A stretch of 64,000 nt of DNA from positions 101,738,595-101,802,594 of the forward strand of contig NC_090382.1 in the NCBI RefSeq assembly GCF_036365525.1. The letters are read 5' to 3'. The notes under the pieces were generated by a model. That model was not told where the DNA came from. It worked only from the letters and a program-made list of their open reading frames with translations, and did no database searches. Origin of the DNA: Heterodontus francisci (taxonomy: Eukaryota). A program made the position numbers and the translations under genes. Below are positions 28,378 to 63,262 of this stretch, one piece after another (within the stretch, counting starts at the first letter, position 1; every line of letters begins with the position of its first letter).

Positions 28378-28443
28378 CTATTTTCTGTGTGCTACTTGTG
28401 CATAGATAACAGATGAATCATCTTCATTTGAGGGAGCCAGGTT
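28378..28443 (-). CDS. Ig receptor terminal exon (ITIM VIYAQV, stop)
   Basis: ttctctcttgcag|AAC; encodes NLAPSNEDDSSVIYAQVAHRK followed by TAG. Confidence 0.82.
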   Translation of the reverse strand, partial: NLAPSNEDDSSVIYAQVAHRK

Positions 28444-28585
28444 CTGCAAGAGAGAAATTAACCATTTATAATAATGTGAATTGTTTTTGCATCTCTTTAC
28501 ATCAGTTGACAATGTTACAAATTTGTTGCTGATATTAATATATTGTAGTGCCTGTGATTTCATCAATAACAATCAATGTACTTAC

Positions 28586-28629
28586 AGTATCTGATGACTG
28601 GTTATTGTGCTGCATACCATGTCTGTCCC
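28586..28629 (-). CDS. Ig receptor exon: cytoplasmic 4 (spacer)
   Basis: ttatcacag|GG...ACT|gtaagt; 44 nt, phase 1-0, exactly the phase needed to join the flanking exons. Encodes GDRHGMQHNNQSSDT. Confidence 0.72.
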
Positions 28630-29677
28630 CTGTGATAATTGCAAACATTGATATTAAAGGATAACATTGACCGATCAGACTGACAGAAAAACTTACAATT
28701 AGGATATATAAACATCCTCAACTTATTGCATTTCACATACAGACAATGAATCAGCGAGACATTGATTGACATGAACCCAGTTGTCCTCTGTATGACTCAG
28801 ATCCACATTAAGCACTGCATTTACACGGTAACCCACAAGGAATATCATAAATGAACCAAGCTGCTTCCATGGCTGTTGGGAGTTTGCATGACCTACTGCT
28901 AGCTCATTCAGGTGCTGGTGGAAGTGGGGGCTCTTCAGATGAAAACAAAGGCCAGTGAGGCTGGTGAAAGCAGGAACTACTCCTTCAGTCTTATTTTCAT
29001 TGAAGTATGGGGACAACATGAAAGGAATGGAGGTTGCATGTCACAGATCACCACCCCTTTTCTTATTACGGCCCAGGGAATAATTGTTTCCCAGCTACTG
29101 TTAGGAAGATCAATGTTACTTAGATCAATTTGAGAACTTTCATAATGCCTTTCACATCTTCAGGACATGCAAGAGCAAATTAAATGCCTTTACAGTCTCG
29201 TCACTGTTCTAAGGAATGCACCTCCAATAATGCAGCAAGCAAATCTTGAACTCATGATCTTCTTTCTCAGAAGTGAGAGAAGTGAGAGCCAAGCTGGCAC
29301 TCTGAAGGCTGAAACAAGTTTCTTTCCATGCTACATGTGCAAAGTTGATGTGATATAATTCAAGAAAGTAACATGTTTTCTTCCTACTATGGTTCCATAT
29401 TACTAGTAGTTTAGTTCAAAAATAGTCACAAACAATTCAATCACATCAACACTTTTTCTACAAAAAGTTACAATGGAAAGACACAACTGATTATATTAAT
29501 ATGCAATGCTGCCAATGCTTTATTGTCAGTGAAAGAAGCCATAATGGCCCTAGGCTATCATAACATTTCTGGTGTTTGTTCTCAGGAAGACCCTTATCCC
29601 TACTTGCCCTAAGAAAGCAGGAGACATTCTTTTGAAGCAATTGTACACTTCTGAGAGCAGTAAGAGTTAGCCACATA

Positions 29678-30360
29678 GAGCTGGATTTTACCAGCCCTCT
29701 GGGGATGGACTGGGAGGCCCATAAAGTGGTGAGTGAAGGCAGGGTGGAGTGCCCATTGTCTTCCTGTCGCCATTCCAATTTTACCAGCAGTGGGGAATGT
29801 GGAGGACAGCCCTCCTGCCCATAGGACAATTGAGCCACTTAACTGGCTAATTAAGGGTCCCTTCCTGCCACCTTGACGTTTTACCAACAGCAGGTAGGTT
29901 CTCTGCCGCATAGGGAGAGGGACTGGCAAATCCTGGCGGCCTTGCTGCAGGCTCGGGGGCCCAGCTGTTTGAGCTCTGAGGGGCTCCCTGGCGGCAATGG
30001 CCGATCCTGTGTCAACCACTGCATGCCCTGCCCTGCCATCACCACCACCACCAACACACACCACTCCCCCCCCCAACCCCCAAACCTCACTGAGCATGCC
30101 CGACTGGCTCCAGCGCTTCCAGACCCTCCTTACCTGATTGGGATAGTGGCCTGGTTTCATGGTGTCCTCTCATCCAGGTGCAGTCTGCTCCCAGTGGTAC
30201 TGCTGAGAGCTGAGCTGCTGACCCTCCGATTGACTGGTAGCTCCTGGGGGTGGGCGCCCATCCTTTAAAGGATGTGGGTCCCACAAACGGCCGAGATGGG
30301 GTCGCCGCTGGCTTTTGGGCCCATTGTCTAGGCCCCTGCTGCACCAATAAAATTCCGGCC
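29678..30360. mobile_element. Harbinger-type MITE with 3-bp TSD ATA
   Basis: ATA-gagctggatttta ... taaaattccggcc-ATA. Confidence 0.8.
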
Positions 30361-30777
30361 ATAGTGTGAATTAGAGTCGATTGAAGCCACAAAGTAGGTG
30401 ACTTTTTTTTGAAGGACATTAGTCAACCCAAATACCTCGAGTTTCCTGGTGCTAGCCTACAAATTGTGAGATTTATTAGATTCAATTTCACAGCCCACCA
30501 TGGTAGGATTGGAATTCATGTCTTTCAGGTTGATAGTCCAGTACCATAGTCACCACTGTACTGTACCTGGCTGTTGAGGTACTTTAATAATTGTTGTTTC
30601 TGGTTCTGCAGCCTCAATACAGCTCCTACTGAGAATTTACCTACAGAAAAATACTTAGTGGAATTCAACATGATCTGCAATTTCTCTGAGAGGACACAAT
30701 ATATAACTGTGTGGTAAATGGAAAAATGGCACACTGGTGCATCAGCACAGGTGCTTTTCTGTGATTCGTGAGAAAAA

Positions 30778-31200
30778 GGAAAAGAAAGACTTGCATTTAT
30801 ATATCACATTTAACAACCTCAGCACACCCCAAAGCACTTTCCAGATAATTAAGTACTTTTGAAGTGTAGTCACTTTTGTAATGTAATCACACAGCAACCA
30901 ATTTGGACATAAGCAACCACAAACAGCAATGTGCTAACAACCCGATCATTGGCCAGGATACCAGAGAGAACACTCCTGCACTTCTTTGGAATAGTGCCAT
31001 GGGATTTTTTTGTGCCCACCCGAGAGAGCAGGCAGGGTCTTGGTTTAACATCTCACCCAAAATATGGCACATCCAACATTGCAGCACTCTATCAGTACTG
31101 CCTTGGAGTGTTAGCCTCGATTTTTGTACTTTGGAGTAAGACTTGAACACAACATTCACATTCAGAGGCAAGAGTGCCACACACTGAGGCACAGCTGACA
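30778..31200 (-). mobile_element. DeuSINE (SacSINE1-like), near full length
   Basis: tRNA-like head (gtcagctgtgcctcagtgtg...gttcaagtc), central domain, and aaatgcaagtctttcttt tail. Related pieces at ~31480-31800 and ~43440-43990. Confidence 0.65.
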
Positions 31201-31344
31201 GCCACTTAACACTTTTATAGGGCAGAGCAGAGCTTCTCCCTTCATGCTTGATGCTGATATGAGGTGCCTAAAGATAATTAGCTTTATTACCCAGCATTAA
31301 CCTTCCTAACATTAAAGAAAACAAAAATGAAAAAAAAACACTAC

Positions 31345-31401
31345 CTGGTGCTTTTTTCTGAAAAGAGACAGATCCATAATGAATATCTTCTCTTTCTGTG
31401 T
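31345..31401 (-). CDS. Ig receptor exon: cytoplasmic 3 (ITIM IHYGSV)
   Basis: ttctctgtag|AC...CCA G|gtagtg; 57 nt, phase 1-1. Encodes NTEREDIHYGSVSFQKKAP. Confidence 0.82.
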
Positions 31402-32129
31402 CTACAGAGAATAAGATGGAAGTAAAGAATTTACATCTAGATATATAGTGCCAGAACATATCCCAAAATAAATAATGAATTACTTTTAAAGTGTAAGTAT
31501 TGTTGTCAAATAAACAAACACAACATACAAGGTACCAAAAGCAATAAATGAGAAAACAAACAATTAATCTCTTGTGGTGACTTTGATTGAGTGGAGAATT
31601 TTCATCAGTACAACTCCTTTACTTCTAATACTACACTGATAACTTTAACAGGCACCAAAACTTGACTCAACTGATAAGACAGTGATATGGAAAATGCAGT
31701 ATCCCCCTGAAGTGTCAGTCTAGAGTACACACTCAAGGTCTGAGGCTTGAACCCAGAACCTCCTGTCTCTAAAGTGACAGTGCTGCGAAGTTGACTCAAA
31801 AATTGGAGTATCAACTACATAGATCTGTTGTTGCAGATTTAATAAACAATGCAAATTTAACAAAATAGCTCACTAATCACATTATCTTTTCCAATTTTAT
31901 TCTCTCCCACCTCTCCTGACTCGCACTAGGTGATGGTTCCACAAGTATTGACAGTTCTCCAGTATATAACTCAAACATTCATTCTCCATGTGAGAGCCTG
32001 GATATTAAATGTTGGGAAGATGTAAGATCATGTGGAGTCTCAAAGCCGAGAGTGATCCTGACACCCGCACTTGTTTACTTTGTTTTAGTGATTCATGTTA
32101 TTTCTAAGAGCTTTGGGAGAGTGCGGAGC

Positions 32130-33643
32130 ACCACAGGAGTGGCCACAAGAGTTTAAAAGGCAGCATGGCAAAGCAGAGCAGGAAATTCAAAACGGAGTAA
32201 ATTTGCAAAAGTGTTGCCATGGCCGAAGGAATGGAGGAGCCTGTGAAAACAGAGTGTCATCAGGTCGAGCATAGAGGAAAAGCTCTGAATGTGAGTAAAT
32301 CGAGTGAATTTTTTTTTTAACAATGGGAGTCTATCTAATTTATTTCAGGCTACGAAATAATAAATAAGACTAGAGGTGGCAGGGCAGGGTAAGTGTCTGG
32401 CCTATATTATATGGGAGTTTGTGGACAGCTAGATTGTTCCAGATTCCCACATCTGCAGGAAATGTTTCTGCCTCAGTCACCCCAGCTCAGAATCACTGAG
32501 CTGGAATGCGAGTGAGAGACTCTCAGAAACATAAGGGAGGGGAAGAATTTCTGGCAAGTCTTATCCAGAACACAGTCACACCTCAGAGGAAAGCATAGGT
32601 TCAGGAAGTGGAAGGGGTGACTGTAAGGGGGCTGGGTAATGGGAACTTCAGGAAGGTTGGAAAGGAGGTCCTGCCACACTGTCCCTGTGCAATAGGTGAA
32701 ATATGTTCACTACCTGAGAGGACAAGGAGATAGAGTGAGGAAAACCACATTGCAGACCAGGACACTGTGGCTCAGTGGGGAGAAAGAGTAGAATAGAAAT
32801 GTGGTATTGATAGGGGATTCTTTAATTAGATGGATAGATGATGTATTTTGAAGCCATGAATGATAAGGTCAAAGCATGCAGGTAGAGGGGCAAGTGGCAT
32901 GAGTGGTTAGCCAGCTGGCTGCAAGAGAGAAAGCAGAGAAAAACTGTTCAGAGCAGCAGAAGATGGAAAATGGGTCCCACAAGCATCAGGTTTGGGAACA
33001 CTGTTGTTTGCAATTTATATTAATGATTTAGACTTTGGAATAAAAACATAATTTCTAAATCTCTAATGACACCAAATTGCAGGGACTGACAATACTGAGG
33101 AGGATGGCAGCAAATCACAAGATAACATTAATAAACATTTAAGAATGGAAATATAATTGGCAAATAAATTTTAACATCGATAACCGTGAGGTATTACATT
33201 TTGGTAAGAAAGATAAGGTGGTCACAGATTACTTGGAAAATATGAATGTAAATGGGGTAGAAGAGCAAAAGGGAGTACAAATTCACAGATCACTAGAAGT
33301 AATGACACAGGTTAATAAGGCCATTAAAAAAAAGCAAAGCAAGAACTAGGATATATTTCTGGAAGGATATTGAAAAGTAAACAAGTTATGTTAAACTTGT
33401 ATTGAAACTTGGTTAGATCATACTCTGAGCACTGTTTACAGTTGTGACCATATTATAAAAGGACATAGAGGCGCAGGAGAGGGTGTAAAAAAGATTTGCA
33501 AGGATGCTATCAGAAATACACGGTTCGACAGATCAGGAAAAGATGAACAGGCTGGATCTCTTTTCTCTTGAAAAGTGAAGGCTGAGGTCTGACCGAATAC
33601 AAGTCTTCAAAATTATGGAAGATTTTAAAAGAGCAAACACAGA
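32130..33643 (+). mobile_element. Decayed CR1 (ORF1 and ORF2 remnants), left part; continues at 41263-41590
   Basis: Zinc-finger ORF1 remnant (HICRKC...LRITELE), VVLIGDS and RT remnants; sequence resumes after the Harbinger insertion. Confidence 0.75.
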
Positions 33644-34014
33644 GGGTCGGATTTTACATGAAGGCAGCAACTCCCACCGCTGGGGCTGAAAATGGGTGGA
33701 TTGGCCACATGGGTGGCGGAGGGGGACTACAATTTCATGCAGGGCTGGCCAATTAAGGGCTGGCAAGAGGATGAGGAGGCCCATGAGATGGGACAGGTTG
33801 CGGGGGGTGATAGGGGTGGGGAGTTCCAGAGCGTCAATCACTGGCATCATCTTTAAAAGCCAGGCAGTAGCACAGGATAATGCAGCAGCCCCGGAGGGAG
33901 TGGTGAGCGTGTCCTGGCAGCACTGCAAGTTGAAGAAATGGACGAAGTTCAATCAAGGGTATCCCCAAGATTCAGCGAAGCCTCCCTGGATATACTCCTC
34001 CAGGCTGTACTATT

Positions 34015-35470
34015 TTTTATTCATTCATGGGATGTGGGCGACGCTGGCCAGGCCAGCAATTATTGCCCATCCCTAATTACCCTTGAGAAGGTGCTGGTGA
34101 GCTGCCTTCTTGAACTGCTGCAGTCCATTTGGGGTACATAGACCCACAGTGCTGTTAGGAAGGGAGTTCCAGGATTTTGACCCAGCGACAGTGAAGGAAC
34201 GGCGATATAGTTCCAAGTCAGGATGGTGTGTGACTTGGAGGGGAACTTACAGGTGGTGGTGTTCCCATGTATTTACCGCCCTTGTCCTTCTTGTTGGTAG
34301 AAGTTGCAGGTTTGGAAGGCGCTGTCTAAGGAGCCTTGGTGCGTTGCTGCAGTGCATCTTGTAGATGGTACACACTGCTGCCATTGTGCATCGGTGGTGG
34401 AGGGAGTGAATGTTTGTAGATGGGGTGCCAATCAAGTGGGCTGCTTTGTCCTGGATGGTGTCTAGCTTCTTGAGTGTTGTTGGAGCTGCACCCATCCAGG
34501 CAAGTGGAGAGTATTCCATCACACTCCTGACTTGTGCCTTGCTGATGGTGGACAGGCTTTGGGGAGTCAGGTGGTGAGTTACTCGCCTCAGGATTCCTAG
34601 CCTCTGACCTGCTCTTGTAGCCACGGAATTTAAATGTCTACTCCAGTTCAGTTTCTGGTCAATGGTAACCCCTAGGATGTTGATAGTGGGGGATTCAGCG
34701 ATGGTCATGCCATTGAATATCAAGGGGAGATGGTTAGATTCTCTCTTGTTGGAGATGGTCATTGCCTGGCACTTGTGTTGCACGAATGTTACTTGCCATT
34801 TATCAGCCCAAGCCTGGATATTGTCCAGTTCTTGCTGCATTTCTACACGGACTGCTTCAGTATCTGAGGAGTCACGAATGGTGCTGAACATTGTGCAATC
34901 ATCCGCGAACATCCCCACTTCTGACCTTATGATTGAAGGAAGGTCATTGATGAAGCAGCTGAAGATGGTTGGGCCCAGGACACTACCCTGAGGAACTCTT
35001 GCAGTGATGTCCTGGAGCTCAGATGATTGACCTTCAACAACCACAACCATCTTCCTTTGCATTAGGTATGACTCCAGCCAGCAGAGGGTTTTCCCCCTGA
35101 TTCCCATTGACTCCAGTTTTGCTAGGGCTCCTTGATGCCATACTCGGTCAAATCCTGCCTTGATGTCAAGGGCAGTCACTCTCACCTCACCTCTTGAGTT
35201 CAGCCCTTTTGTCCATGTTTGAACCAAGGCTGTAATGAGGTCAGGAGCTGAGTGGCCCTGGCAGAACCTAAACTGAGCGTCACTGAGCAGGTTATTGCTA
35301 AGCAAGTGCTGCTTGTTGGCACTGTTGATGACACCTTCCATCACTTTACTGGTGATAGAGAGTAGGCTGATGGGGCGGTAATTGGCTGGGTTGGATTTGT
35401 CCTGCTTTTTGGGCAATTTTCCACATTGCAGGGTAGATGCCAGTGTTGTAGCTGTACTGGAACAGCTTGG
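34015..35470 (-). mobile_element. Non-LTR retrotransposon (CR1-group, distinct subfamily) 3' part with uninterrupted 389-aa RT ORF
   Basis: NYRPISLLS, ALDIKAGFDRVWH, VPQGSVLGP and MFADD motifs. Confidence 0.92.
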
Positions 35471-36754
35471 CTACTGGTGCATGCTCTGAAGGTTAGCAGC
35501 TATAATGTTGTCCCTCGTACCTGGCTGCAGTGCCGAAAAAGTGTCATTGACCTGGTGTAGTCTGGATAGGTGAGTGCAGTTCATAACATTCAGCTTGCAG
35601 CCTTAAAATAACAGATAGGAGAAGGGGATGCCCACCCTGTCAGTGGAGATGCCTAGGTATCAGCATTGGCTGTCAGATGCATGTCAGTCTCCCTGTGCAG
35701 GACACTGGTCAGACAGATGTGACTCCAGCAGAGCCAATGCTGATTGGCTGCAGCACCACATTGGACATCAACATAGGAATCGTGCCTCTCTTTGAGTGAC
35801 TAACAATGGGAATGTATGTGCTTGCAGGAGAACAAAGCTCTCAATGTTTGGAAAATATCCAGAACTGGTGGTGTCGTGCCTTACATGGCCATCCTCACTC
35901 CCACGGAAGGGGGAGGCACTGGAGCTGGTTGGAATGGAGGCTGGCCAGGCTATTATGGATGGTAAGATGGTTGTGGAGCCCTGACAGAGTGACTGCCAAA
36001 TGGATGGGCACGAGACCCTCTGGCGAGCACAAAGAATTGTGCCCATGTGTGCACCACTGCTCTCATGGGGCTCCAGATGAATAGTTAGAAGGACATGTTG
36101 GAAAACTCATTGCCCTCTCATCACTCTTCTCTGTCTTGCAGGTCATAGACAAGAGTGGCCAGTCACCCAGCCTGAGACACCCCCCCAATTTTGAGGGTGG
36201 AGTAGGAGATCTCAATGGATGCACTGTCACATCATTCTCCCACACCGTCCACCAGCACAGACACTCTCTTCTCGGTGGGTAGTCGTGTGCGGTGAGTAAC
36301 GGGGTCATATTCTGATGTGCACAGCACAGACGTGCCTGAGCAGCTAACGGAGGCAGTGCCAACTGAGGTCACTCATGCTTGGTGGACTGTGGGAGGACCC
36401 GGTGATGCTCAGTTTCCAGCTGATGACATGCTGCTGGAGTCATCAACAAGGAGCTGCAATGTGAGGTGCAGGAACATCTGGTGGAGTTTCCAGAGGCTTT
36501 GTGCACCCATGCACAGACAACGGGGGAGTCCATCCAGGCCATGAGTGTAGCCATGACTCTGGCTTCCTCCATTGAGAGATTGGCGACACTCATGAAGAGC
36601 CACATCCAGCAGACCATCCAGTGGATGCTAGAGCTGCTCACAGACTTGCATGATATCGCCAAGTCCACGAACTCTGTGGAGCCAAGTGTACCCTGAAAAG
36701 GTGCAGAAGCAGCTTCCTACAGCCACTGAGGTCTTTTCTCAGGGTGCTCTTCAC

Positions 36755-41590: not shown

Positions 41591-41709
41591 AAATCTAAAC
41601 AGCCATTCCTATTGTAATTGTGATATAAACAATGACTGAATAAATAGACAGTATTGTCCTTGAACCCTTTTATAATGGACCCGATTGCTAAAGATTGATA
41701 GAAGAAATA

Positions 41710-42257: not shown

Positions 42258-42335
42258 TGTCTTCGTTTGCCTTTCTATTGACCATTTCATATTCAGCAAA
42301 ACTACTTGTCTCAGGCACTGGAGCCTTGTTATCTC
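42258..42335 (-). CDS. Ig receptor exon: cytoplasmic 2 (YEMV motif)
   Basis: poly-T cag|GA...GAC A|gtaagt; 78 nt, phase 1-1. Encodes GDNKAPVPETSSFAEYEMVNRKANED. Confidence 0.82.
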
Positions 42336-43198: not shown

Positions 43199-43297
43199 CT
43201 TGTATTTTCTGTATTTCATTAATATTTGAGTAAAGACGAGATGCATCTTCTATATTTTCCCCTTGCTGCAGAGATTTCTCTTTTTGATTTCCCAAAT
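43199..43297 (-). CDS. Ig receptor exon: cytoplasmic 1 (YSNI motif)
   Basis: gaacag|AT...CAA G|gtaaca; 99 nt, phase 1-1. Encodes DLGNQKEKSLQQGENIEDASRLYSNINEIQKIQ. Confidence 0.8.
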
Positions 43298-48198: not shown

Positions 48199-48306
48199 CT
48201 GCAACCTTGCACTTGCTTATACACAGCACTACTGCCAGGATAATGATGAGGAGAACAGCCAGACTTCCAAAAACAACAACATGTGTATGCTTAAAAGTGT
48301 AACCAC
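48199..48306 (-). CDS. Ig receptor exon: transmembrane
   Basis: ttcttcacag|GT...GCA G|gtaaga; 108 nt, phase 1-1. Encodes SGYTFKHTHVVVFGSLAVLLIIILAVVLCISKCKVA: uncharged hydrophobic helix followed by Cys and Lys residues. Confidence 0.88.
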
Positions 48307-50630: not shown

Positions 50631-50759
50631 ATGGAGTCATAGAATGATAATCATTTATGACATAGAAGGAGGCCATGCCAGTTGTCCAGGAAGCAATCAA
50701 GTCAGTCCCACACCTCCACTGGATCCCAGTAGCCCTGCAATTTTATTTCCTTCAAGTTT

Positions 50760-53010: not shown

Positions 53011-53019
53011 TTTTTATAT

Positions 53020-54050: not shown

Positions 54051-54059
54051 TTATCTACC

Positions 54060-54990
54060 ATCCACCAGTCTGAATATAGGAGGTATGATAAGTAAGATTG
54101 CAGATGACACGAAAATTGGTGGTGTCATAAATAGTGAGGAGGATAGATTACAGGGAGATATAGATGGGCTGGCAAGATGGGCGGAGTCCTGGCAAATGGA
54201 ATTTAATCCTGAAAAGTGAGAGGTAATGCATTTTGAGAGGACTAACAAGGCAAGGGAATATACAATGGATGGTAGGACCCTAGGAAGTACAGCAGGTCAG
54301 AAGGACCTTGGTGTACTTGTCCCATAGATCACTGAAGGCAGCAGCACAGGTAGATAAGGTGGTTAGGAAGGCATATGGGATACTTGCCTTTATTAGCCGA
54401 GGCATAGAATGTAAGAGCAGAGAGGTTATGATGGGAGCTATATAAAACGTTAGTTAGGCCACAGCTAGAGTACTGTGTACAATTCTGATCACCACACTAT
54501 AAGAAGGATGTGATTACACTGGAGACGGTGCAGAGGAGATTTACCAGGATGTTGCCTGGGCTGGAGAATTTCAGCTATGAAGAGAGACTGAAAAGGGTAT
54601 GGTTGTTTTCCTTGGAGCAGAGAAGGCTGAGAGGGGACATGATTGTGGTGTATAAGATTATGAGGGGCATTGACAAGTTAGATAGGAAGAAATGTTTTCC
54701 TTTAGCGGAGGGGTCAATAACCAGGGGGCATAGATTTAGGGGAAGGGGCAGGAGGTTTAATGGGGATTTGAGGAAAAATGTTTTCACCCAGAACTGTCTG
54801 AAGAGGTGGTGGAGGCAAGAACCCTCACAACATTTAAGAAGTAGTTAGATGAGCACTTGAAATGCCATAGCATACAAGGCTACGGGCCAAGTGCAGGAAT
54901 ATGGGATTAGAATAGTTGGGTGCTGGATGGCCGGCACAGACACGATGGGCCGAAGGGCCTGTTTCTGTGTTGTATAACTCTGACTCTATG
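54060..54990 (+). mobile_element. CR1 3' fragment
   Basis: IADDTKIGG and [14 protein letters not shown] motifs; tail actctgactctatga. Confidence 0.88.
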
Positions 54991-55411
54991 AAAAACAACC
55001 ATTTACTATGACTCACTGTTTTCTGTCCTTAAGGCAATTTTTTATTCAATTTTACCATCCTTTTATGTGTTACTTTATCAAATGCTTTCTTAATATCCAT
55101 ATCGACAACATTCCCTTCATCAACCTTCTCTGTTACTTTGTCAAAAAAATTCAACTAAATTAGTCAAGCATGATTTGCCTTTGACAATTTCATGCTGGCT
55201 CTTCTTAATTAACTCAAACCTCTCCAAGTGCCTGTTGATTATTTTTTCCCTTGATTATTATTTCTAAAATATTATCTACCAATAATGTTAAACTAACTGG
55301 CATGCAGTTGCTTGGACTGACCTTACACCCATTCTTGAATAAGGGTGGCACATTTGCCACTCTACAATCCTCTGGCACCACCCTGATGTCCAGGGAAGAT
55401 TGGAAGATTAT

Positions 55412-55590
55412 GGCAATCATCCAAACATTGATAAACAATCATTCAGTGGTCAATCATTCCTCCAGCCAATTACCCAATGATCTCCTGGCCAATCATCCCA
55501 TCATTCCCTGGCCAATCATTTTCCAGTCAATCATCCAATCATTTCCCCAACCAATCATTTACTGGCAAACAATCCTTGCCAATTGCCTCC
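55412..55590 (+). repeat. Imperfect (C)CAATCAT motif cluster
   Basis: About ten caatca(t)-like units in ~180 bp. Confidence 0.7.
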
Positions 55591-55666
55591 ACTTCAAGAA
55601 TATCTTTCCAGAAGTGACATTGGTTAAATATGTGTCAGATCCATATAAGTGGTAGAGACAGAGTGA

Positions 55667-56406
55667 CAGGGGAATTTTATCCTGGCGGTGAGGTTTTTTG
55701 ATATCCAGAGAAACCAATGTCAGGATCCCTGCGTTACCTCGTCTACAGAAGGCCCGCTGAATTTAGTGCCAATCGGGTACTTAAGTGGACAGTGGTGGGC
55801 CTTCCACAGGATCAAGGACCGCATCGCTGGAAGTCCTGCCCTTGCAGAGCTGCCGGCTAATTAAAGGCTGGCCGCTGCAGTGCTACCATGGAGGTGGTTG
55901 CTGCTGTTACAGGTCCACCAACTGGAGACCGAGGAGTGTCACTGGAACCAGGCCTCAGGTCAGGTTGGGAGGGGCCTCAGGGGGGTTGGGGATCGTGGGG
56001 GAGGTGGGTTGGCAGCAAGGGCAGGGTGGTCCTCAGTGGACCCTGCCCCTTCCTGATACAGGGTCCCTCGTTTAGGCCGTAAGTGCCTTTTAATGAGGGA
56101 TCACACCCCCTCCCCACCACCACCGGAGCAAGGAAGCAGCCAGCACGGTTTTCCATGCTGTGATTCCTGTGCGGTGCCAGGGCTGCCCGCTGCATGGATG
56201 ATTGCAGCTGCAGCGGGAAGAGGCCCTTAACTGGGGGTTAATTGCCCAATTAAGGGCCTCAATTGATAGTGGGGTGGGAAGGCCGTTCACAGATTAAATT
56301 TTGGCAAAGGCGGGACTGTGGTGGGAAATGCCCCGCACCATCCCACCTGATTGTAAACTCTGTCTGCCTCCAAATCTGACACGGGGGAGAGCATAAAATT
56401 CCGTGC
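55667..56406. mobile_element. Harbinger-type MITE
   Basis: ggggaattttat ... ataaaattcc termini; internal cttaagtgg and ttaattgccc motifs shared with the other MITEs. Confidence 0.6.
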
Positions 56407-56537
56407 CCTCCACCCCGCCAGTGTTACATTTTCCATATTTGCAAGGAAAGCAACTAAGTTATTGGCATCTAGTCTTATTACAGTGGGCAGAGAGGATATA
56501 ATGTTTAGAAGACTCCTACAGAAAGTCAGTCAGGCTT

Positions 56538-56733
56538 GAAACAGAAAGTTGCAAGGGCAAGCTAGGGCTAGGTTCAGAGATTTAGTTCGTAGCAGGATCA
56601 TTAGGAGTTAATTTGTTTATCTAAGTCATCAACACACTTGTTTGGGAAAGTATAGCATATTCATTATTTTGAACTTATGCACAAAGCCAAGTTATACTGA
56701 TTGAACTAAGTGAATCTGACCATAACTGTTATT
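56538..56733 (+). repeat. Intronic direct repeat, copy 1 (copy 2 at 58181-58351)
   Basis: gaaacagaaagttgcaagggcaagc...ataactgttatt; the copies differ by a 25-bp indel and a few substitutions. Confidence 0.92.
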
Positions 56734-56908
56734 ATGTCCATTCCTTTTGAGGTATATAATTTGACTTTTGATGTTAAGCTGTTTATATTGAAACACCTAT
56801 GATTGTGAACACTTAGTAATATAAAACTGAGGGGCTGTCATTACAAAAAAGCAGTAAGTGAAATAGCTTTCTATGAAAATTACAAAGAGCAAAATCTGAG
56901 AGACTTAC

Positions 56909-57178
56909 TGTTAAACTTCAGATAATATGGAATTAAAACCTTGGGTGTGTTTTGATGAAATAAAACACATGTCCAGTTCTCTCTGTCTCTATCGGTTTTC
57001 TGAATAATCAGCTGTAAAACATCCTCTTCCTGTTTTTGTTCCTTCAATGTTTTCTCTGCAACAGTTTTGCCATCATTATTAATCCAAACAAGTCTCATTG
57101 ATTTAGTGACATCAGAGACAGAGCAGGTCAGGGTAACGGTGTCTCCCTCAGTCACTGCATCAGGTGGTTCAGCTGTGA
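56909..57178 (-). CDS. Ig receptor exon: C2-type Ig domain with WxC F strand (putative D4)
   Basis: tttccacag|TC...AAC A|gtaagt; 270 nt, phase 1-1. Encodes VTAEPPDAVTEGDTVTLTCSVS...LVWIN...LQLIIQK...NWTCVLF. Separated from the V exon by a 78-bp intron. Confidence 0.92.
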
Positions 57179-57256
57179 CTGTGGAAACAAGAAAATCATT
57201 TAGATTTTAAACAATAACATGATCATTCAAAACCATGGGAACATTCTGTCTCCTAC

Positions 57257-57595
57257 CTTTAACTGTGATTAGTTTAAAGGTCACATATTTATATGATCCC
57301 AGAGAACATGTGTAAACTCCTGCATCTTCAAACAGTACAGGGACAATCCTCACACTGAAGTTCTTGCCATTAAAATTTGCCGCTACAGGGACCAGTCGAC
57401 TTCCAAAGTAGGTCCTGTTTATATTGAAAGGCTCAGATCTGTAAGTAGAAGCTATTTCTTTTTCTTGATTCTGAAAATAACGTGATGACCAGGTCCATTT
57501 AGTTCTATTGTGCTCAGATAAAGCTTTACAACTCAGGTAGAGTTCACTGTGATCTAAGCCTGACCGATAAAGTGTGTCTATTGCATTGTGTAAAT
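57257..57595 (-). CDS. Ig receptor exon: V-type Ig domain (putative D3)
   Basis: ctctattgcag|AT...AAA G|gtagga; 339 nt, phase 1-1. Encodes LYLSC...KWTW...FSVRIVPVLFEDAGVYTC (V-set DxGxYxC motif). Confidence 0.92.
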
Positions 57596-58180
57596 CTGCA
57601 ATAGAGAGAGGAAACAAGGTGTTAGATTTTTATAGATACTGAGATTCAAATGTTCTGAATTTCGATAGGGCCAAACAGCATCCTCCTAATATAAATCAGC
57701 CGGGAGTGTTGCATTGGGACAGGAAAATCAGCTGGAACCTGGATACACTGGCTGCTGGCTCAGGCTGACTATTGCTTAAATGCAAAGCCCATCCACACCA
57801 AACGTGGCCCCCATCAAAATGATAGTATAACAATATATCACAATCATTAAAATGCTAGGAACTAATTATGTGTAAATGTTCCAGTGGGGCCACATTCACG
57901 GATGCACTGCAGAGTCATGTGATGTGTAACAGGAAACCAGTCTGAAGTAGTCCTACACCATGCAGCATGGTGGCTGAATGGAATAAACAACGACTTCAGC
58001 CTTTCCAAGTTTAGTGTGATTATTTCCAACATCTGGAAGCCAGAAGACGTAACAGTAATATAGGATCAGAAAATGCTTGAAATACTCAGCAGGGCTGGTA
58101 GTATGTGTGGAGAGAGAAACAGAGTTAATTTTTTAGGTCTGTGGCCTTTCATCAGATATGAGTTTGATGAAAATCTGTCA

Positions 58181-58351
58181 GAAACAGAAAGTTGCAAGGG
58201 CAAGCTTGGGCCAGATTCAGAGATTTAGTTCATAGCAGGGTCATTAGGAGTTAATTTGTTTAGGAAAGTATAGCATGTTCATTATTTTGAACTTATGCAC
58301 AAAGCCAAGTTATACTGATTGAACTAAGTGAATCTGATCATAACTGTTATT
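58181..58351 (+). repeat. Intronic direct repeat, copy 2
   Basis: Matches 56538-56733. Confidence 0.92.
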
Positions 58352-58399
58352 CTGTAGGTTAACTTGCTGTGCACTAAAGCAGTTGAACAATTCATTACT

Positions 58400-61300
58400 G
58401 GCCTTTTGGTACAAGGGAAGAAGTTGATTGGTGAGTAACTGGTAAGTTATTTTACTTCCCATTGTAATAAAAAATTTTTAAAGTTACAGTATGGCAGGTC
58501 AGCTCAGCCAAGTGGAATGTACGTCCTGCGGTATGTGGAAAGTCATGGACACACCATGCGTCTGAGATGAACACATCTGTCACCGGCTGCAGAAGCTTGA
58601 GCTCCGGGTTTCAGAACTCGAGCAGTGGCTGCAGTCACTGTTCTGCATCCATGAGGCAGAGGACTACGTGGATAGCACGTTTCGGGAGGTGGTCATACCG
58701 CAGGTTAGGAGCATGCAGGCAGAGAGGGAATGGGTGACTGCCAGGCAGTCTATGAGAACCAGGCAGGCAGTACAGGAGTGCCCTGAGTCTATCTTGCTTG
58801 CTAATCAGTTTTCCATTTTGGATACTGGTGAGAGCAATGGATACATGGGGGAGTGCAGCCAAAGCAAAGTACGTGGCACCACGGGTGCCTCAGCTGCACA
58901 GGAGGGGAGGAAGAAGAGTGGAAGAGCAATAGTGATAGGGGATTCAATAGACAGGGGATCTGACAGGTGTTTCTGCGGCAGTAAACATGACTCCAGGATG
59001 GTGTGTTGCCTCCCTGGTGTCAGGGCCAAGGATGTCACGGAGCAGCTGCAGGACAACCTACTGGGGAAGGGTGAATAGCCAGAGGTCGTGGTCCACATTG
59101 ATACCAATGACATAGGTAGGAAGAGGGATAAGGTCCTGAAAGCAGATTTTAGGGAATTAGGAAGGAAATTAAAAAGCAGGGCCTTCAAAGCAGTATTCTC
59201 AGGATTACTCCCAGTGCCATGTGCTAGTGAGCATAGGAATAGGAGGATTGATCAATTGAACACGTGACTGGAGAATTGGTGTCGAAGGGCGGGCATCAGA
59301 TTTCTGAGGCATTGGGACCAGTTCTGGGGCAGGTGGGACCTGTACAAGATGGACGGGCTATACATAAAACAGGACTGGAACTAACATCCTTGCAGGGAGA
59401 TTTGCTAGTGCTGTTGCGGAGGATTTAAACTAGCTTGTCAGGGGGATGGGAGCCTGAGGGGTAGCTCAAATTGGAAGGAAGTAAAGCTGGTAACAGGAGG
59501 TAGAAAAGTAGCCAGTGACATTAGAAGGCAGGTGAAACAAAGACAAGCATCAACTAGGCCTAGAATGCAAAATGTCAAGAAGACAAGGTTAAGGGCACAC
59601 TACCTGAATGCACACAGTATTTGCAACAAGGTAGATGATTTAAAGGCCCAAATAGAAGTAAATGGGTATGATCTAATTGCCATAACGGAAATGCGGCTAC
59701 AGGGTGAGCAAGACTGGGAACTGAATATTCAAGGATATTCGACATTTAGGAAGGAAAGGCAGAAAGGAAAAGGATTTGGTGTTGTGCTAACAATAAGGGA
59801 TGGGATTAGTGCATTAGTAAGGGAGGATCTCAGATCGGAAGAACAAAATATGGACTCTGTTTGGGTGGAGCTAAGAAACAGCAAGGCGCAGCAAACATTG
59901 GTAGAAGTTGTTTATAGGCCACCAAACAGTAGTGGTAGTGTGGGGCATGGTATTAATCAGAAGATTAGAGAAGCATGTGACATAGGTAACACAGTAATCA
60001 TGGGTGATTTCAATCTGCATATAGACTGGGTAAACGCAATGAGCACTAATGTTGTGGAAGATGAGTTTCTAGAGTGCGTTAGGGATGGTTTTCTAGAGCA
60101 GTATGTTGAGGAACTAACTAGAGAACAGGCTATTTTAGATATAGTATTATGTATTGAGAAAGGGCTAATTAATAATCTTGTTGTAAAAGAACTTTTAGGG
60201 ATGAGTGACCATAATATGATAGAATTTTACATTGTGTTTGAAAGTGAGGTAGTTCAATCTGAATCGAGGGTGCTAAATTTGAACCAAGGAAATTATGAAG
60301 GTATGAAGGGCAAATTGGCTGAGGTGGATTGGGAAAATACATCAAAAGGTATGACAGTACATATGCAATAGATAGTCTTTTAAGAAATAGTACATAATTT
60401 ACAACAATTATACATTCCTTAAAGGCATGCAAACCCCAAACGTAAAGGCAGTCAACCATGGAAAACAAAGGAAGTCAAGAATTGTATAAGACTAAGAGAA
60501 AAGGCCTATAAAGTTGCCTGAAATAGTAGTAAACATGAGGATTGGGAGGGTTTTTAGAATACAGCAAAGGAGAACCAAGAAATTGATAAAGAAAGGGAGA
60601 ATAGAATATGAATGTAAGCTAGTAAAAAATATAAAGACAGACTTTAAAATCTTCTATAGGTACGTAAAAAGGAAACGTTTGGCGAAGACAAATGTGGGTC
60701 CATTACAGGCAGAGTCAGGAGAATTTATAATGGGGAACAGAGAAAAGGCAGTGAGGCTAAATGATTACTTTGTGTCTGTCTTCACTGAGGAAGATGCAAG
60801 AAATCTCCCAGAATTAGAGATCCAAGGGATTAGGGGGAAAATGATGAATTGAAGGAAATTAGTATTAGTAAGAAGGTTGTATTGGAGAAATTAATGGGGC
60901 TGAAGGTTGATAAGTCCCCAGAACCTGATATTCTACATATAAGAGTATTGAAAGAGGTAGCTGTGGAAATAATGGATGCATTGGTGATCATCTTCCAAAA
61001 TTCTATAGATTCTGGAGCAGTTCCTGCAGATTGGAAGGTCGCAAATGTCACCTCACTATTTAAGAAGGGAGTGAGAGAGAAAACAGGGCTCTACAGACCG
61101 GTTAGCCTAACATCAATTGTTGGGAAATGCTAGAATTTATTCTAAAGGATGTGATAAGTGGACACTTGGATAATAATGATCTGATTGGGCATAGTCAACA
61201 TGAATTTATGAATGGGAAATCATGTTTGACAAACCTGTTGAAGTTTTTTGAGGATGTTACTAACAGCATTGATAAAGGGGAGTCAGTGGACATGGCGTAC

Positions 61301-62465
61301 TTGGATTTTCAGAAGGCTTTTAATAAAGTTCCCCACAGGAGATTGGTTAGCAAAGTTAAAACACATGGGGTAGGAGGTAACATACTGGCATGGATAAGGA
61401 TTGGATAACAGGCAGAAAGCAGAGAGTAGGAATAAATGGGCCATTCTTGCATTGGCAGGCTGTGATTAGTGGGGTACTGCAGGGAGCAGTGCTTGGGCCC
61501 TGCTGTTCACAATATATATCAATGATTTGGATGCGGGGACCAAATGTAGTATTTCCAAGTTCACGGATGACACAAAACTAGGTGGGAATGTGTGTTGTGA
61601 GGAAGATGCAAAGCGGCTTCAAGGGGATTTGGACAGACTTAATGAGTGGACAAGAACGTGGCAGATGCAATATAATGTGGGAAAATGTGAGGTTATCCAC
61701 ATTGGTAGGAGAAATGGATGTGCAGAGTATTTCTTAAATGGTAAGAGATTAGAAAGTGTAGATGTACAAAGGGACCTGGTTGTCCTTATCAATAAGTCAC
61801 TGAAAGCTAACATGCAGGTGCAGCAAGCAATTATAAAGGCTAATGGTATGTTAGTCTTTGTCGCAAGAGGATTTGAGTAGAGGAGTAGTGAAGTCTTGTT
61901 TCAATTGTATAGAACCTTGGTAGACCGCACTTGGAGTACTGTGTGCAGTTTTGGTCCCCTTATCTTAGGAAGGATATTATTGCCATAGAGGGAGTAGATT
62001 CACCAGACTTGTTCCCGGGATGGCGGGACTGTTATATGAAGAGAGATTGGGGAAAATGGGCCTGTATTCTCTAAAGTTTCGATGAATGAGAAAGAAACCG
62101 ACAAAATACTTAAAGGGATAGACAGGGTAGATGCAGCTAAGATGTTTCTCCTGGTTGAGGAGTCTAGAACCAGGGGACACCATTTCAAAATAAGGGGGAA
62201 GCCACTTAGGACAGAGATGAGGAGAAATTTCTTTATCAGAGGGTTGTGAATCTTTAGAATTCTGTACCCCAAAGGGCTGTGGAAGCTCAGTCATTGAGTA
62301 TGTTTAAGGCAGAAATTGACAGATTTCTAAATACAAGTGATTTAAGGGGATATGGGGATAGTGTGGGAAAAGGCATTGAAGTGGATGATCAGCCATGATC
62401 ATATTGAATGGCAGGGCAGGTTCAATGGGCTGAATGGCCCACTCCTGTTCCTCTGTTCCTATGTC
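58400..62465 (+). mobile_element. Near full-length CR1 LINE (ORF1 zinc finger and SGNH esterase; ORF2 APE endonuclease and RT), inactivated
   Basis: VECTSCGMW, IVIGDS, VCCLPG, HIDTND; YLNAHS, AITE, VYRPPNS, MGDFN, SDH; DFQKAFNKVPH, KFTDDTK. Many stops and frameshifts. Confidence 0.95.
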
Positions 62466-62989
62466 TCACCAAGGGTTTTTTGGTTCACCTTCAAAAGCAA
62501 TCAACAGAAATATCCAGTTCAGGTCACAAGGGAATCTTATTCTTACACCCACTGGCGATGTGATCATTTATTCACATGTCAAGCAGTCAGAGAATACCCC
62601 TACATATAAGACACTCAGACCACTTTTGAGAGTTACCAGCTCCACTGTACTCAAGAGAATTTCTCAGGAAACACCCTAATGTTGTAACTATTATGCTGAT
62701 ATTTCTCCATTCCAATGTCGACTGGAAAGGAATTTCCTTTATTCGATTGAATGGATTTTATTATTTTTGATTCATAAATGTGAATTGAAATGAATCCATT
62801 GAATTCACCTGATTGGTTACATCATTCTTAATGTCCCTATTTTATATTTACACCCATGTTCCAGGGGAAAAAACAAGGACCACATTCTGCAGTAAATCCC
62901 ACAGTGGTTTCTGTGCTCACTGTATTTGTGTGTAACAGTTTTATATTAGTTATTATTTAATACCTACTGCAAGGTAGCTCTGGACTTAC

Positions 62990-63262
62990 CCAGATCCACA
63001 TCAACATTTGTGTTTCCACTGAGAACAATGGAGTCATTTTCATGCACTTCCCATGTATATAAATTCTGATTCTCTGCTCCAACTTGTCTGACTATCAGAT
63101 AGACTGTGTTATTCAGATGGATCTCATCAATATTGTTCCTCCTGTTCTGCTGAGATGAGTCTCTTGGTTTCCAGTGAAGACTGACTGTATCTGAGAGTTT
63201 GGAGATGGTACAGCTGAGGGTGATGTCACTGCCCATTACAGGCCTCTTTGAATTTGTCTCAA
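62990..63262 (-). CDS. Ig receptor exon: C2-type Ig domain (putative D2)
   Basis: ttttacag|TT...CTG G|gtaagt; 273 nt, phase 1-1. Encodes VETNSKRPVMGSDITLSCTISKLSDTVSLHWKP...LYTWEVHENDSIVLSGNTNVDVDL, with B-strand Cys and C-strand Trp. Confidence 0.85.

What the first reader, a model, noticed from the sequence alone, without database searches (positions are those of the whole stretch)
28378..63262. Candidate inhibitory CD4/LAG-3-related receptor with a four-tyrosine, two-ITIM tail, hidden among TEs
Seen in sequence: nine phase-compatible minus-strand exons give C2 - V - C2(NWTC) - TM - ~120-aa tail carrying LYSNI, EYEMV, IHYGSV and VIYAQV. Most of the small exons are invisible in the ORF track. 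Established: alternating V-C2-V-C2 domains with WxC in the C2 F strand characterise the CD4/LAG-3 family; CD4 tails carry the LCK-binding Cx(C/H) motif and LAG-3 tails an (F/Y)xxL(D/E) motif; (I/V/L/S)xYxx(I/V/L) is the ITIM consensus that recruits SHP-1/SHP-2. This tail has neither the CD4 nor the LAG-3 motif, but has two canonical ITIMs 39 residues apart, and the TM has no charged residue. Inference: a separate, probably poorly described lineage of CD4/LAG-3-like inhibitory immune receptor in a cartilaginous fish, possibly one member of a multigene cluster.
Basis: partly seen in the sequence, partly recalled or inferred. Interest (0 to 1): 0.9.

Follow-up and report, generated by a model that had tools for sequence, protein, structure and literature searches.

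The report
Shark G6F-like/CD4-like inhibitory receptor gene
The window holds the 3' two-thirds of a real shark gene for an inhibitory cell-surface receptor built like CD4/LAG-3, one member of a large and so far unnamed family of paired inhibitory and activating receptors in sharks and rays that is related to the fish "G6F-like" receptor.

Summary
Nine minus-strand exons with AG/GT borders and matching phases encode C2 – V – C2(NWTC) – uncharged TM – ~120-aa tail carrying LYSNI, AEYEMV, IHYGSV and VIYAQV. Every exon matches predicted proteins of other sharks and rays.

- **Family:** at least 90 elasmobranch proteins, nearly all "uncharacterized". 36 have this TM type; 30 of them keep both ITIMs. 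21 others have a lysine in the TM and a short tail, so this is a paired inhibitory/activating multigene family.
- **Fold:** models of two homologs have CD4-type V–C2 rods. CD4 and LAG-3 are the best matches in the PDB by profile, Foldseek and a Foldseek-independent search (rat CD4 D3-D4: Z 15.9, rmsd 2.4 Å).
- **Nearest described relatives:** the family aligns over its full length with a ray-finned-fish group (hhalign E 8e-81). That group includes sturgeon and bichir proteins carrying the G6F-like "VENIYEN" motif.
- **Correction:** the YTWEV signature marks the first exon as domain 6 of eight-Ig receptors, so the window probably holds D6–D8.
- **Untested:** Inhibitory signalling through SHP-1/2 and Grb2 is inferred.

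Verdict: a real gene and a new variant of a known kind, of moderate to high interest.

The parts
62990..63262 (-). Exon E1: C2-type Ig domain (LSCT ... YTWEV). Trp replaces the F-strand Cys. This is the domain-6 type of eight-Ig family members.
   Evidence: AG/GT borders, phase 1/1. Weak Pfam Ig_3/Ig_2 hits. 90% identity to Pristiophorus P0062 residues 558-646. YTWEV marks D6 in 17 of the 21 multi-module proteins listed, with YTWDV or YTWKV in two more.
57257..57595 (-). Exon E2: V-type Ig domain (LSCK ... W ... DAGVYTCS ... LITVK).
   Evidence: Pfam V-set E 2.9e-7. phmmer against 1.8 billion proteins gave 55 hits, the best at E 5e-143.
56909..57178 (-). Exon E3: membrane-proximal C2 Ig domain with NWTC (WxC motif) and the YYLKF end.
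   Evidence: Pfam ig E 2.7e-9. In the family profile this domain aligns with LAG-3 D2, with WxC and YNLxV in register.
48199..48306 (-). Exon E4: short stalk, uncharged TM (VVVFGSLAVLLIIILAVVLCI) and juxtamembrane CISKCK.
   Evidence: Hydrophobicity scan, borders, 76% identity to P0062 residues 740-773.
43199..43297 (-). Exon E5: tail exon with LYSNI (Grb2-type YxN) followed by NEIQKIQ.
   Evidence: 21 of 36 inhibitory-type relatives carry Y(S/H/L)N. The same YSN..E(I/L)Q stretch occurs in sturgeon, tarpon and eel relatives.
42258..42335 (-). Exon E6: tail exon with AEYEMV (ITIM/ITSM-like; SEYATV in some relatives).
31345..31401 (-). Exon E7: tail exon with the ITIM IHYGSV.
   Evidence: 30 of 36 relatives carry I(H/Q)Y..(I/V/L).
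28586..28629 (-). Exon E8: 44-nt spacer exon (GDRHGMQHNNQSSDT) that changes the phase from 1 to 0.
   Evidence: tblastn with homolog tails, borders CACAG|GG ... ACT|GTAAGT.
28378..28443 (-). Exon E9 (coding part): NLAPSNEDDSSVIYAQVAHRK plus stop; the C-terminal ITIM VIYAQV.
   Evidence: 30 of 36 relatives carry this motif. AATAAA lies 151 and 260 nt downstream of the stop.
56538..56737 (.). Direct repeat copy 1, in the intron just downstream of the V-C2 exon pair on the gene strand.
   Evidence: the repeat finder gives two gap-free blocks at 91% and 96% identity. blastn gives 83.5% over 200 aligned columns (gaps included), and only two copies exist in the window.
58181..58355 (.). Direct repeat copy 2, in the intron just upstream of the V exon.
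34247..35416 (-). Intronic LINE reverse-transcriptase ORF, an example of the transposon debris filling the introns. Not part of the gene product.
   Evidence: Pfam RVT_1 E 1e-34.

Best explanation
Window 28378-63262 (minus strand) holds the last nine exons of an intact-looking gene. They encode three membrane-proximal Ig domains (C2, V, C2 with WxC), an uncharged transmembrane helix, and a ~120-residue tail spread over five small exons.

The gene belongs to an elasmobranch-wide multigene family. Family ectodomains are built from V-C2 rods of the CD4/LAG-3 type, with four Ig domains or eight as a doubled set. The family is co-orthologous to the ray-finned-fish G6F-like group. The window most likely holds D6-D8 of an eight-domain member; the leader and D1-D5 would lie beyond base 64000.

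Family members come in two forms. One is the long-tail form seen here, with a YxN motif and two conserved ITIMs. The other has a lysine in the TM and a short tail. This is a paired inhibitory/activating receptor system.

Inferred mechanism: ligand binding clusters the receptor and Src-family kinases phosphorylate the tail. The two ITIM phosphotyrosines, 39 residues apart, dock the tandem SH2 domains of SHP-1/SHP-2, which dampen nearby ITAM signalling. pYSN can dock Grb2. The lysine-TM partners would signal through a DAP12- or FcR-gamma-type adaptor.

Shown here: gene structure, family membership, fold and motif conservation. Inferred: phosphatase and adaptor recruitment. Unknown: ligand and cell type (leukocyte or thrombocyte).
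For: - **Gene model:**
- **Homologs:** 55 phmmer hits with the V exon alone. 91 elasmobranch proteins with a full-length member as query, nearly all 'uncharacterized'.
- **Paired forms:** 36 members with this TM type, of which 30 keep both ITIMs; 21 lysine-TM short-tail forms. The two forms intermix on the tree.
- **CD4/LAG-3-like fold:** the family profile against PDB puts LAG-3 (1.3e-9) and CD4 (5.8e-8) among the top hits, with WxC aligned. The AF2 model of P0078 (pLDDT 80, ectodomain mostly above 90) has continuous strands 132-147 and 336-350 running from V into C2. Foldseek's top four hits are LAG-3, LAG-3, CD4, CD4. VIA-align gives Z 17.6 for CD4, and rat CD4 D3-D4 at Z 15.8, rmsd 2.5 Å, 169 residues. 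A second model of a D3-D4 fragment was searched without Foldseek against 48,161 chains: first is rat CD4 D3-D4 (Z 15.9, rmsd 2.4 Å), second is CD4 D1-D2 (Z 14.4). Foldseek on that model gives CD4 as the top 12.
- **G6F-like link:** the nearest named ESM-Atlas clusters are 'g6f-like' (0.96-0.97). hhalign of the elasmobranch alignment against the ray-finned alignment gives probability 100%, E 7.9e-81, 473 columns. Sturgeon and bichir members end in VENIYEN, the zebrafish G6fL Y499 motif read from the published primers. G6fL is described as four Ig domains + TM + YxN + ITAM (PMC3528668).
- **D6-D8 assignment:**
Against: - Only a small run that the tool guessed to be RNA holds 47% of the sampled words of the V-C2 stretch.
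- The upstream exons are outside the window, so intactness of the whole gene is unknown.
- No Pfam model specific for CD4 matches.
- WxC is missing from the other C2 type.
- The G6F-like name rests on automatic cluster names plus a 7-residue motif. No curated G6fL sequence was aligned.
- ITIM function is inferred from consensus and conservation only. YxN plus tyrosine motifs could also support positive signalling.
Confidence: 0.75

Rival explanations
1. The copy in this window is a non-functional or unexpressed family member. Multigene receptor clusters carry many pseudogenes, so it could be one whose last nine exons merely still look intact.
For: Large, transposon-filled introns. No junction reads were obtained. 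The leader and upstream domains are unseen. The V exon is only 75% identical to its best database hit.
Against: All nine exons are open, with consensus splice sites and correct phases, including the 44-nt phase-correcting exon. All family-invariant Cys and Trp residues and all four tyrosines are kept. A 147-Mb run holds about half of the sampled words of the V-C2 stretch, which is hard to explain from shallow DNA data on a very large genome (inference).
Confidence: 0.1
2. The tail is not mainly inhibitory. It would act as an adapter or switch tail, with Grb2 on pYSN and the xEYxxV/IHY/IYAQ tyrosines working as ITSM-like or ITAM-like sites, as in teleost G6F-like, which activates thrombocytes in response to collagen.
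For: The YxN motif is shared with G6F and G6fL, and G6fL is an activating collagen receptor (PMC3528668). The YSN and EY exons are variably present among relatives.
Against: There is no Yxx(L/I)x6-12Yxx(L/I) ITAM spacing: the tyrosines are 39 residues apart. Both invariant motifs fit (I/V/L/S)xYxx(I/V/L). The family has separate lysine-TM forms, which is the usual way the activating arm of a paired system is supplied.
Confidence: 0.12
3. It is an ortholog or recent copy of shark CD4 or LAG-3, or a member of another Ig receptor family (CEACAM, Siglec, FcRL/LILR, skate MDIR), and the CD4-like features are generic to Ig domains.
For: CEA is formally the top profile hit in PDB (E 3.9e-11). Source names include 'obscurin-like', 'VCAM-1-like' and 'CD276 homolog'.
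Against: The CEA score is the sum of six weak single-domain hits, the best being 16 bits, against 23 bits for the LAG-3 V-end-plus-C2 stretch. Two-domain rigid-body fits are found only with CD4 and LAG-3. The tail lacks the CD4 and LAG-3 motifs. Shark CD4 and LAG-3 are single, different genes (PMC10768021). MDIRs have CD300/pIgR-type V domains and did not appear among the hits.
Confidence: 0.03

Closest known systems
Teleost G6F-like (G6fL; Ohashi et al. 2010, Hughes et al. 2012) and the wider ray-finned-fish group around it
   Same: - A V-C2-V-C2 ectodomain that is homologous over its full length, leader to TM (hhalign probability 100%, E 7.9e-81).
- A D1 without cysteines carrying the (V/I)WEW(K/T)PH motif.
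- WxC in the last C2 domain.
- A YxN tyrosine in the tail at the same place.
- Sturgeon and teleost paralogs share the whole tail plan YSN - (I/L/V)HY - V(I/V)Y(A/S)x(I/L). Sturgeon also has a lysine-TM form.
   Different: - Described G6fL has an ITAM split over two exons and is reported as a thrombocyte collagen receptor.
- The shark gene has two ITIMs instead.
- It belongs to a large expanded family with eight-domain members and interleaved activating forms.
- No ligand or cell type is known.
CD4 / LAG-3 family
   Same: - V-C2 rods with one beta-strand running from the V domain G strand into the C2 A strand.
- WxC in the membrane-proximal C2 domain.
- Best structural and profile matches in the PDB.
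- A juxtamembrane cysteine pair: CxxxC here, CxxC in human CD4 (the latter from my own knowledge).
   Different: - 12-24% identity in the structure-based alignments.
- No Cx(C/H) LCK clasp and no (F/Y)xxL(D/E).
- WxC is absent from the D2/D6-type domain.
- The tail is spread over five additional small exons, whereas the LAG-3 tail is a single exon.
- It is multigene rather than single-copy.
- No CD4-specific Pfam model matches.
Mammalian MHC class III neighbours G6F (LY6G6F) and G6b-B (MPIG6B)
   Same: - G6F has a Grb2-binding YxN tail.
- The Atlas lists LY6G6F and G6B clusters among the near neighbours.
- G6b-B is an ITIM+ITSM platelet inhibitory receptor that recruits SHP-1/2 (my own knowledge).
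   Different: The mammalian proteins have one Ig domain and are single genes. No alignment to them was made here.
Paired receptor families (KIR/LILR, SIRP, CD300, teleost NITR/LITR, skate MDIR)
   Same: The same logic: near-identical ectodomains joined either to a long ITIM tail with an uncharged TM or to a short tail with a basic TM residue. They form tandem multigene clusters, and the activating and inhibitory forms intermix on the tree.
   Different: The domain types and ancestry differ. MDIRs, the only such family described in a cartilaginous fish that my searches found, use CD300/pIgR-like V domains.

Membership tests
CD4/LAG-3 family | Ectodomain of alternating V-C2-V-C2 domains | tested here: met
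   Full-length relatives have leader-V-C2-V-C2, or the set doubled. The window itself shows only C2-V-C2.
CD4/LAG-3 family | WxC motif in the F strand of both C2 domains (D2 and D4) | tested here: not met
   WxC is present in D4/D8 (NWTC here). The D2 type has YxC and the D6 type has YTW.
CD4/LAG-3 family | Continuous beta-strand joining the V domain G strand to the C2 domain A strand (rigid rod) | tested here: met
   AF2 models of two homologs: strands 132-147 and 336-350 and 109-124. Two-domain fit to rat CD4 D3-D4 at rmsd 2.4-2.5 Å over 169 residues.
CD4/LAG-3 family | Tail motif Cx(C/H) (CD4) or (F/Y)xxL(D/E) (LAG-3) | tested here: not met
   Read exon by exon, the tail has neither motif. 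The only cysteines are the juxtamembrane C..SKC.
CD4/LAG-3 family | Genomic position in the CD4-LAG-3 region | not testable with these tools
G6F-like (fish) | Four Ig-like domains plus TM, homologous in sequence to G6fL | tested here: met
   hhalign E 7.9e-81 against a ray-finned group that includes VENIYEN-bearing sturgeon and bichir proteins. The nearest Atlas clusters are 'g6f-like'. Caveat: no curated G6fL sequence was in hand.
G6F-like (fish) | Conserved cytoplasmic YxN (Grb2 site) | tested here: met
   LYSNI in E5. 21 of 36 relatives carry it.
G6F-like (fish) | Cytoplasmic ITAM split over two exons | tested here: not met
   There is no Yxx(L/I)x6-12Yxx(L/I). Two ITIMs lie 39 residues apart instead.
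G6F-like (fish) | Expression on thrombocytes; collagen binding | not testable with these tools
   No expression or binding data could be obtained.
ITIM-bearing inhibitory receptors | At least one (I/V/L/S)xYxx(I/V/L) in the tail of a type I protein with an uncharged TM | tested here: met
   IHYGSV and VIYAQV, uncharged TM, conserved in 30 of 36 relatives.
ITIM-bearing inhibitory receptors | Phosphorylation-dependent recruitment of SHP-1/SHP-2/SHIP | not testable with these tools
   Needs biochemistry.
Paired activating/inhibitory receptor families | Close relatives with a charged TM residue and a short tail | tested here: met
   21 lysine-TM forms (motif GYL(L/F)VKL) in sharks and rays, intermixed with ITIM forms on the tree. 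No such exon occurs in this window.

The most novel reading that the evidence does not exclude
Sharks and rays run a KIR/LILR-like system of polymorphic, paired activating and inhibitory receptors on a CD4/LAG-3-type scaffold. This G6F-like/CD4/LAG-3 superfamily would then descend from a paired ITIM/charged-TM receptor of the ancestral MHC-linked region. Its members might sense MHC class II-like, collagen-like or other ligands, making the family a direct window on how CD4 and LAG-3 acquired opposing tails.
Probability: 0.15. Interest if true: 0.85.

Novelty: new variant of a known kind. Interest (0 to 1): 0.6.

Why it matters
CD4 and LAG-3 are a textbook pair of related receptors with opposite signalling, and G6F and G6b-B are their little-studied MHC-encoded neighbours. 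This gene shows that cartilaginous fish carry a large, unnamed family on the same structural scaffold.

The family already uses the ITIM-tail versus charged-TM logic of natural-killer and myeloid paired receptors. Its tail plan (YxN plus two ITIMs) is shared with bony-fish relatives, so it probably predates the split between cartilaginous and bony fish.

The family gives comparative immunologists three things:
- a concrete candidate for innate paired receptors in sharks, where few are known;
- a testable link between the G6F-like and CD4/LAG-3 lineages;
- a set of natural four- and eight-domain variants for structure-function work.

It also shows that such genes are easily missed or mis-joined by automatic annotation, because their tiny tail exons are scattered through tens of kilobases of transposons.

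Tried and rejected
- **Read laying:** Later scripts used 1-26900 or 27100 and above as query. In one search the whole window served only as a local BLAST subject.
- **The look-up of encoding contigs:** closed, so there is no neighbourhood or synteny check.
- **The protein-atlas search:** the first try found the tool busy; the repeat succeeded.
- **Ab initio scan for the phase-correcting exon:** it gave only implausible candidates. The true E8 came from homology.
- **Alternative acceptor inside E9:** considered and dropped once E8 was found.
- **Pfam:** no CD4-specific model (C2-set PF05790, CD4-extracel) matches the exons or shark homologs.
- **The search for homologous proteins with sturgeon and ray-finned queries:** returned only 'uncharacterized' names, so the G6F-like label could not be confirmed from source names.
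- **Literature searches:** these covered shark members of this family, 'obscurin-like' in nurse shark, MDIR, and G6F/G6B in sharks. No description of the elasmobranch family was found. Ohashi 2010 and the Venkatesh 2014 supplement are not held.
- **Paralog or activating-TM exons elsewhere in the window:** none found.
- **Joined spliced protein:** never built or searched. Every search used single exons by reference or natural homolog proteins.
- **Careful tree search:** did not finish. The quick tree is reported.
Full report
**1. Observation**

Reading the minus strand around them gives exons with AG acceptors behind pyrimidine tracts and GT donors:

| Exon | Coordinates | Content |
|---|---|---|
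| E1 | 62990-63262 | C2-type Ig domain |
| E2 | 57257-57595 | V-type Ig domain |
| E3 | 56909-57178 | C2 domain with NWTC |
| E4 | 48199-48306 | stalk, TM, CISKCK |
| E5 | 43199-43297 | LYSNI |
| E6 | 42258-42335 | AEYEMV |
| E7 | 31345-31401 | IHYGSV |
| E8 | 28586-28629 | spacer |
| E9 | 28378-43 | VIYAQV, stop |

(E9 is 28378-28443.) E1-E7 are phase 1/1, as is usual for Ig-superfamily genes.

At first the last exon seemed out of frame, because E7 ends in phase 1 and E9 needs phase 0. An ab initio scan did not solve this. tblastn with the tails of homologs found a 44-nt exon (GDRHGMQHNNQSSDT) that changes the phase from 1 to 0.

The two ITIM tyrosines are 39 residues apart, and the TM has no charged residue. 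Introns carry LINE reverse-transcriptase and endonuclease fragments on both strands.

I never built or searched the joined protein. All searches used single exons by reference or natural homolog proteins.

**2. It is a real gene of a large family**

The V exon alone, run by phmmer against 1.84 billion representative proteins, found 55 proteins, 29 of them below E 1e-10. All nine window exons find their counterparts in these proteins in the same order. The Ig exons match at blastp E 1e-44 to 1e-56, and the TM and tail exons at 1e-8 to 1e-13.

A full-length member as query (P0009, Chiloscyllium) returned 91 proteins from more than 20 species of sharks, rays, skates and sawfish. Nearly all are called 'uncharacterized protein'. 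A few carry generic names such as 'obscurin-like', 'VCAM-1-like' and 'CD276 homolog'. Runs of consecutive LOC numbers on the same chromosomes suggest tandem clusters; that is an inference.

That fits a cluster, but I could not read that DNA.

One nurse-shark record (AGQ17915.1, 'obscurin-like', 916 aa) predates genome annotation of that species, so it is probably cDNA-derived. This rests on my own knowledge and was not verified.

**3. Anatomy of the family**

Full-length members have, in order:
- a leader;
- D1, V-like, without cysteines, with the motif VWEW(K/T)PH;
- D2, a C2 domain (LSCTISRL..TVSL.WK ... LYxCEV);
- D3, a V domain;
- D4, a C2 domain with (N/K)WxC;
- the TM and tail.

Many members have the whole set twice, giving eight domains. 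In 17 of the 21 multi-module proteins examined, from both sharks and batoids, the C2 domain of the second set (D6) reads YTWEV, with Trp in place of the F-strand Cys; two more read YTWDV or YTWKV. D2, where the pattern found it, keeps YxC.

The window's E1 reads YTWEV. Its best hits are residues about 477-805 of the 892-919-aa Pristiophorus proteins. The window therefore most probably holds D6-D7-D8. A few four-domain skate genes derived from the second set (P0103, P0107) leave D2-D4 possible. No D1/D5-type or leader exon lies in 63263-64000.

**4. Two kinds of membrane anchor**

Of the elasmobranch proteins, 36 have the TM type seen here (uncharged, followed by C.(R/K)KCK). Among them, 30 carry I(H/Q)Y..(I/V/L), 30 carry (V/I)(I/V)Y(A/V/T)(Q/E)(I/V/L) at the C-terminus, 21 carry YSN and 17 carry (S/A)EYxx(V/I). 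The members lacking the ITIMs are truncated models.

Twenty-one others have a different TM with a central lysine (GYL(L/F)VKLAVALGL) and a 10-45-residue tail without tyrosine motifs. On a quick ML tree the two forms intermix within species groups, for example Pristiophorus P0078 with P0005, a Leucoraja protein with a Rhinoraja one, and the Mobula and Hypanus proteins. Sturgeon shows the same pairing.

This is the signature of a paired inhibitory/activating receptor family. Tail exons are also duplicated in some members, so the number of tyrosine motifs varies.

**5. Relation to CD4/LAG-3**

Four independent lines support a CD4/LAG-3-type architecture.

- **Sequence profile.** A profile of 25 family members was searched against all PDB sequences. 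LAG-3 (E 1.3e-9) and CD4 (5.8e-8) rank among the top six. The LAG-3 alignment runs from the end of the V domain through the whole C2 domain, with ITASPPGS..LNCSFS, GPWGC and YNLTV in register with VTAEPSDA..LTCSVS, GNWTC and YNLEV. The formally better CEA hit is a sum of six weak single-domain matches.
- **AlphaFold2 model of a four-domain homolog.** For P0078, with 47 sequences in the alignment and the ectodomain mostly above pLDDT 90, single long strands (132-147 and 336-350) run from each V domain into the following C2 domain. Takizawa et al. 2023 (PMC10768021) describe this rare feature as typical of CD4 and LAG-3.
- **Structure search with that model.** Foldseek against 350,542 PDB chains ranks LAG-3, LAG-3, CD4, CD4 first (E about 1e-17 to 1e-16). 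VIA-align gives CD4 Z 17.6. Rat CD4 D3-D4 fits at Z 15.8 with rmsd 2.5 Å over 169 of 177 residues.
- **Second model, Foldseek-independent search.** A natural D3-D4-TM fragment (P0011, pLDDT 84) was searched without Foldseek against 48,161 representative chains. Rat CD4 D3-D4 is first (Z 15.9, rmsd 2.4 Å, 20% identity) and CD4 D1-D2 second (Z 14.4). The other rows down to Z 12.3 fit well (rmsd under 4 Å) over a single domain only. LAG-3 D3-D4 comes at Z 12.3 with 157 residues and 24% identity. Foldseek lists CD4 in its first 12 places.

Against strict membership:
- WxC is found in only one of the two C2 types.
- The tail has neither Cx(C/H) nor (F/Y)xxL(D/E).
- The tail is multi-exonic.
- No CD4-specific Pfam model matches.

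**6. Relation to G6F-like**

The ESM-Atlas feature search named 'g6f-like' clusters as nearest to the shark protein P0078 (0.96, 193-197 of 256 features). It did the same for the sturgeon relative P0025 (0.97, 206-211 features), followed there by CD4, LAG-3, CD4-1 and LY6G6F clusters. These are leads, so I tested them.

- The weaker phmmer hits are proteins of sturgeon, paddlefish, bichir, eels, tarpon and salmonids.
- An alignment of eight of them matches the elasmobranch alignment by hhalign with probability 100%, E 7.9e-81, over 473 columns from the leader to the YSN motif.
- Sturgeon, paddlefish and bichir members end in ..VENIYEN... This is the sequence around Y499, the Grb2-type YxN of zebrafish G6fL, as encoded by the mutagenesis primers printed in Hughes et al. 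2012 (PMC3528668).
- That paper describes G6fL as four Ig-like domains, a TM, a YxN and an ITAM split over two exons, acting as a thrombocyte collagen receptor.
- Other ray-finned members (sturgeon P0149, tarpon, eels, salmonids) have the same tail plan as the shark gene..VYSN(I/V).E(L/I)Q....(L/V)HY..F....V(V/I)YS.(I/L)... Sturgeon also has a lysine-TM form.
- On the tree the elasmobranch proteins form one side of a fully supported branch and the ray-finned ones the other. The shark family is therefore co-orthologous to the whole ray-finned G6F-like group, and the ITIM-tail plan probably predates the split of cartilaginous and bony fish.

From memory (the paper is not held), Ohashi et al. 2010 already noted similarity of G6F-like to CD4/LAG-3 and its linkage to MHC- and CD4/LAG-3-paralogous regions.

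**7. How it most likely works**

Shown here: a type I receptor with CD4-type rods, an uncharged TM, juxtamembrane cysteines, and four conserved tail tyrosines, two of them in canonical ITIMs.

Inferred from established knowledge of ITIM receptors:
- Src-family kinases phosphorylate the tail after ligand-driven clustering.
- The two pY-ITIMs bind the tandem SH2 domains of SHP-1/SHP-2.
- pYSN binds Grb2.
- The lysine-TM relatives pair with a DAP12- or FcR-gamma-type ITAM adaptor and oppose the inhibitory forms.

Ligand and cell type are unknown. The only functional data for a relative point to thrombocytes and collagen. The expansion and the paired forms point instead to leukocyte receptors with fast-evolving ligands.

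**8. Expression**

One small run (147 million letters, guessed by the tool to be RNA) holds 47% of the sampled words of 56800-57700, where exons make up 68%.

**9. Novelty and verdict**

I found no paper describing this elasmobranch family. The shark CD4/LAG-3 paper (PMC10768021) does not mention it. Only open-access text could be searched.

The gene is real. The nearest described family is G6F-like rather than CD4/LAG-3 proper, and the most interesting point is the paired, expanded, four- or eight-domain family. I rate it a new variant of a known kind, interest 0.6.

Noticed in passing
window 56538-56737 and 58181-58355: Two direct repeats of about 200 nt bracket the V-C2 exon pair. The repeat finder gives gap-free blocks at 91% and 96% identity; blastn gives 83.5% over 200 aligned columns with gaps. 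There are only two copies in the window. They may be the footprint of a module duplication or unequal crossing-over, which would fit the variable domain number in the family. The same feature is noted in earlier finding s1-872474.
   Followed up: partly
window 6309-10859 and 14605-19177: A 4.6-kb direct duplication at 98.5% identity, 8.3 kb apart, made of transposon-derived ORFs (reverse-transcriptase and endonuclease fragments). It could be a recent segmental duplication or two copies of a composite element.
   Followed up: partly
window 1-26900: Downstream of the gene there are no further family exons and no other recognisable host gene, only reverse-transcriptase-like and other repeat-derived ORFs.
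   Followed up: partly
homolog proteins P0006, P0094, P0065, P0003, P0076, P0081: Single tail exons are duplicated in tandem in some family members: the IHY ITIM exon, the YSN exon and the EY exon. The number of tyrosine motifs therefore varies between paralogs or isoforms.
   Followed up: partly
homolog proteins P0150 and P0151 (sturgeon) against P0149: Sturgeons also have a lysine-TM short-tail form next to an ITIM-tail form with a closely related ectodomain. Pairing in this receptor family is therefore not restricted to cartilaginous fish.
   Followed up: partly
Nothing from them was examined or sent to any search afterwards.
   Followed up: no
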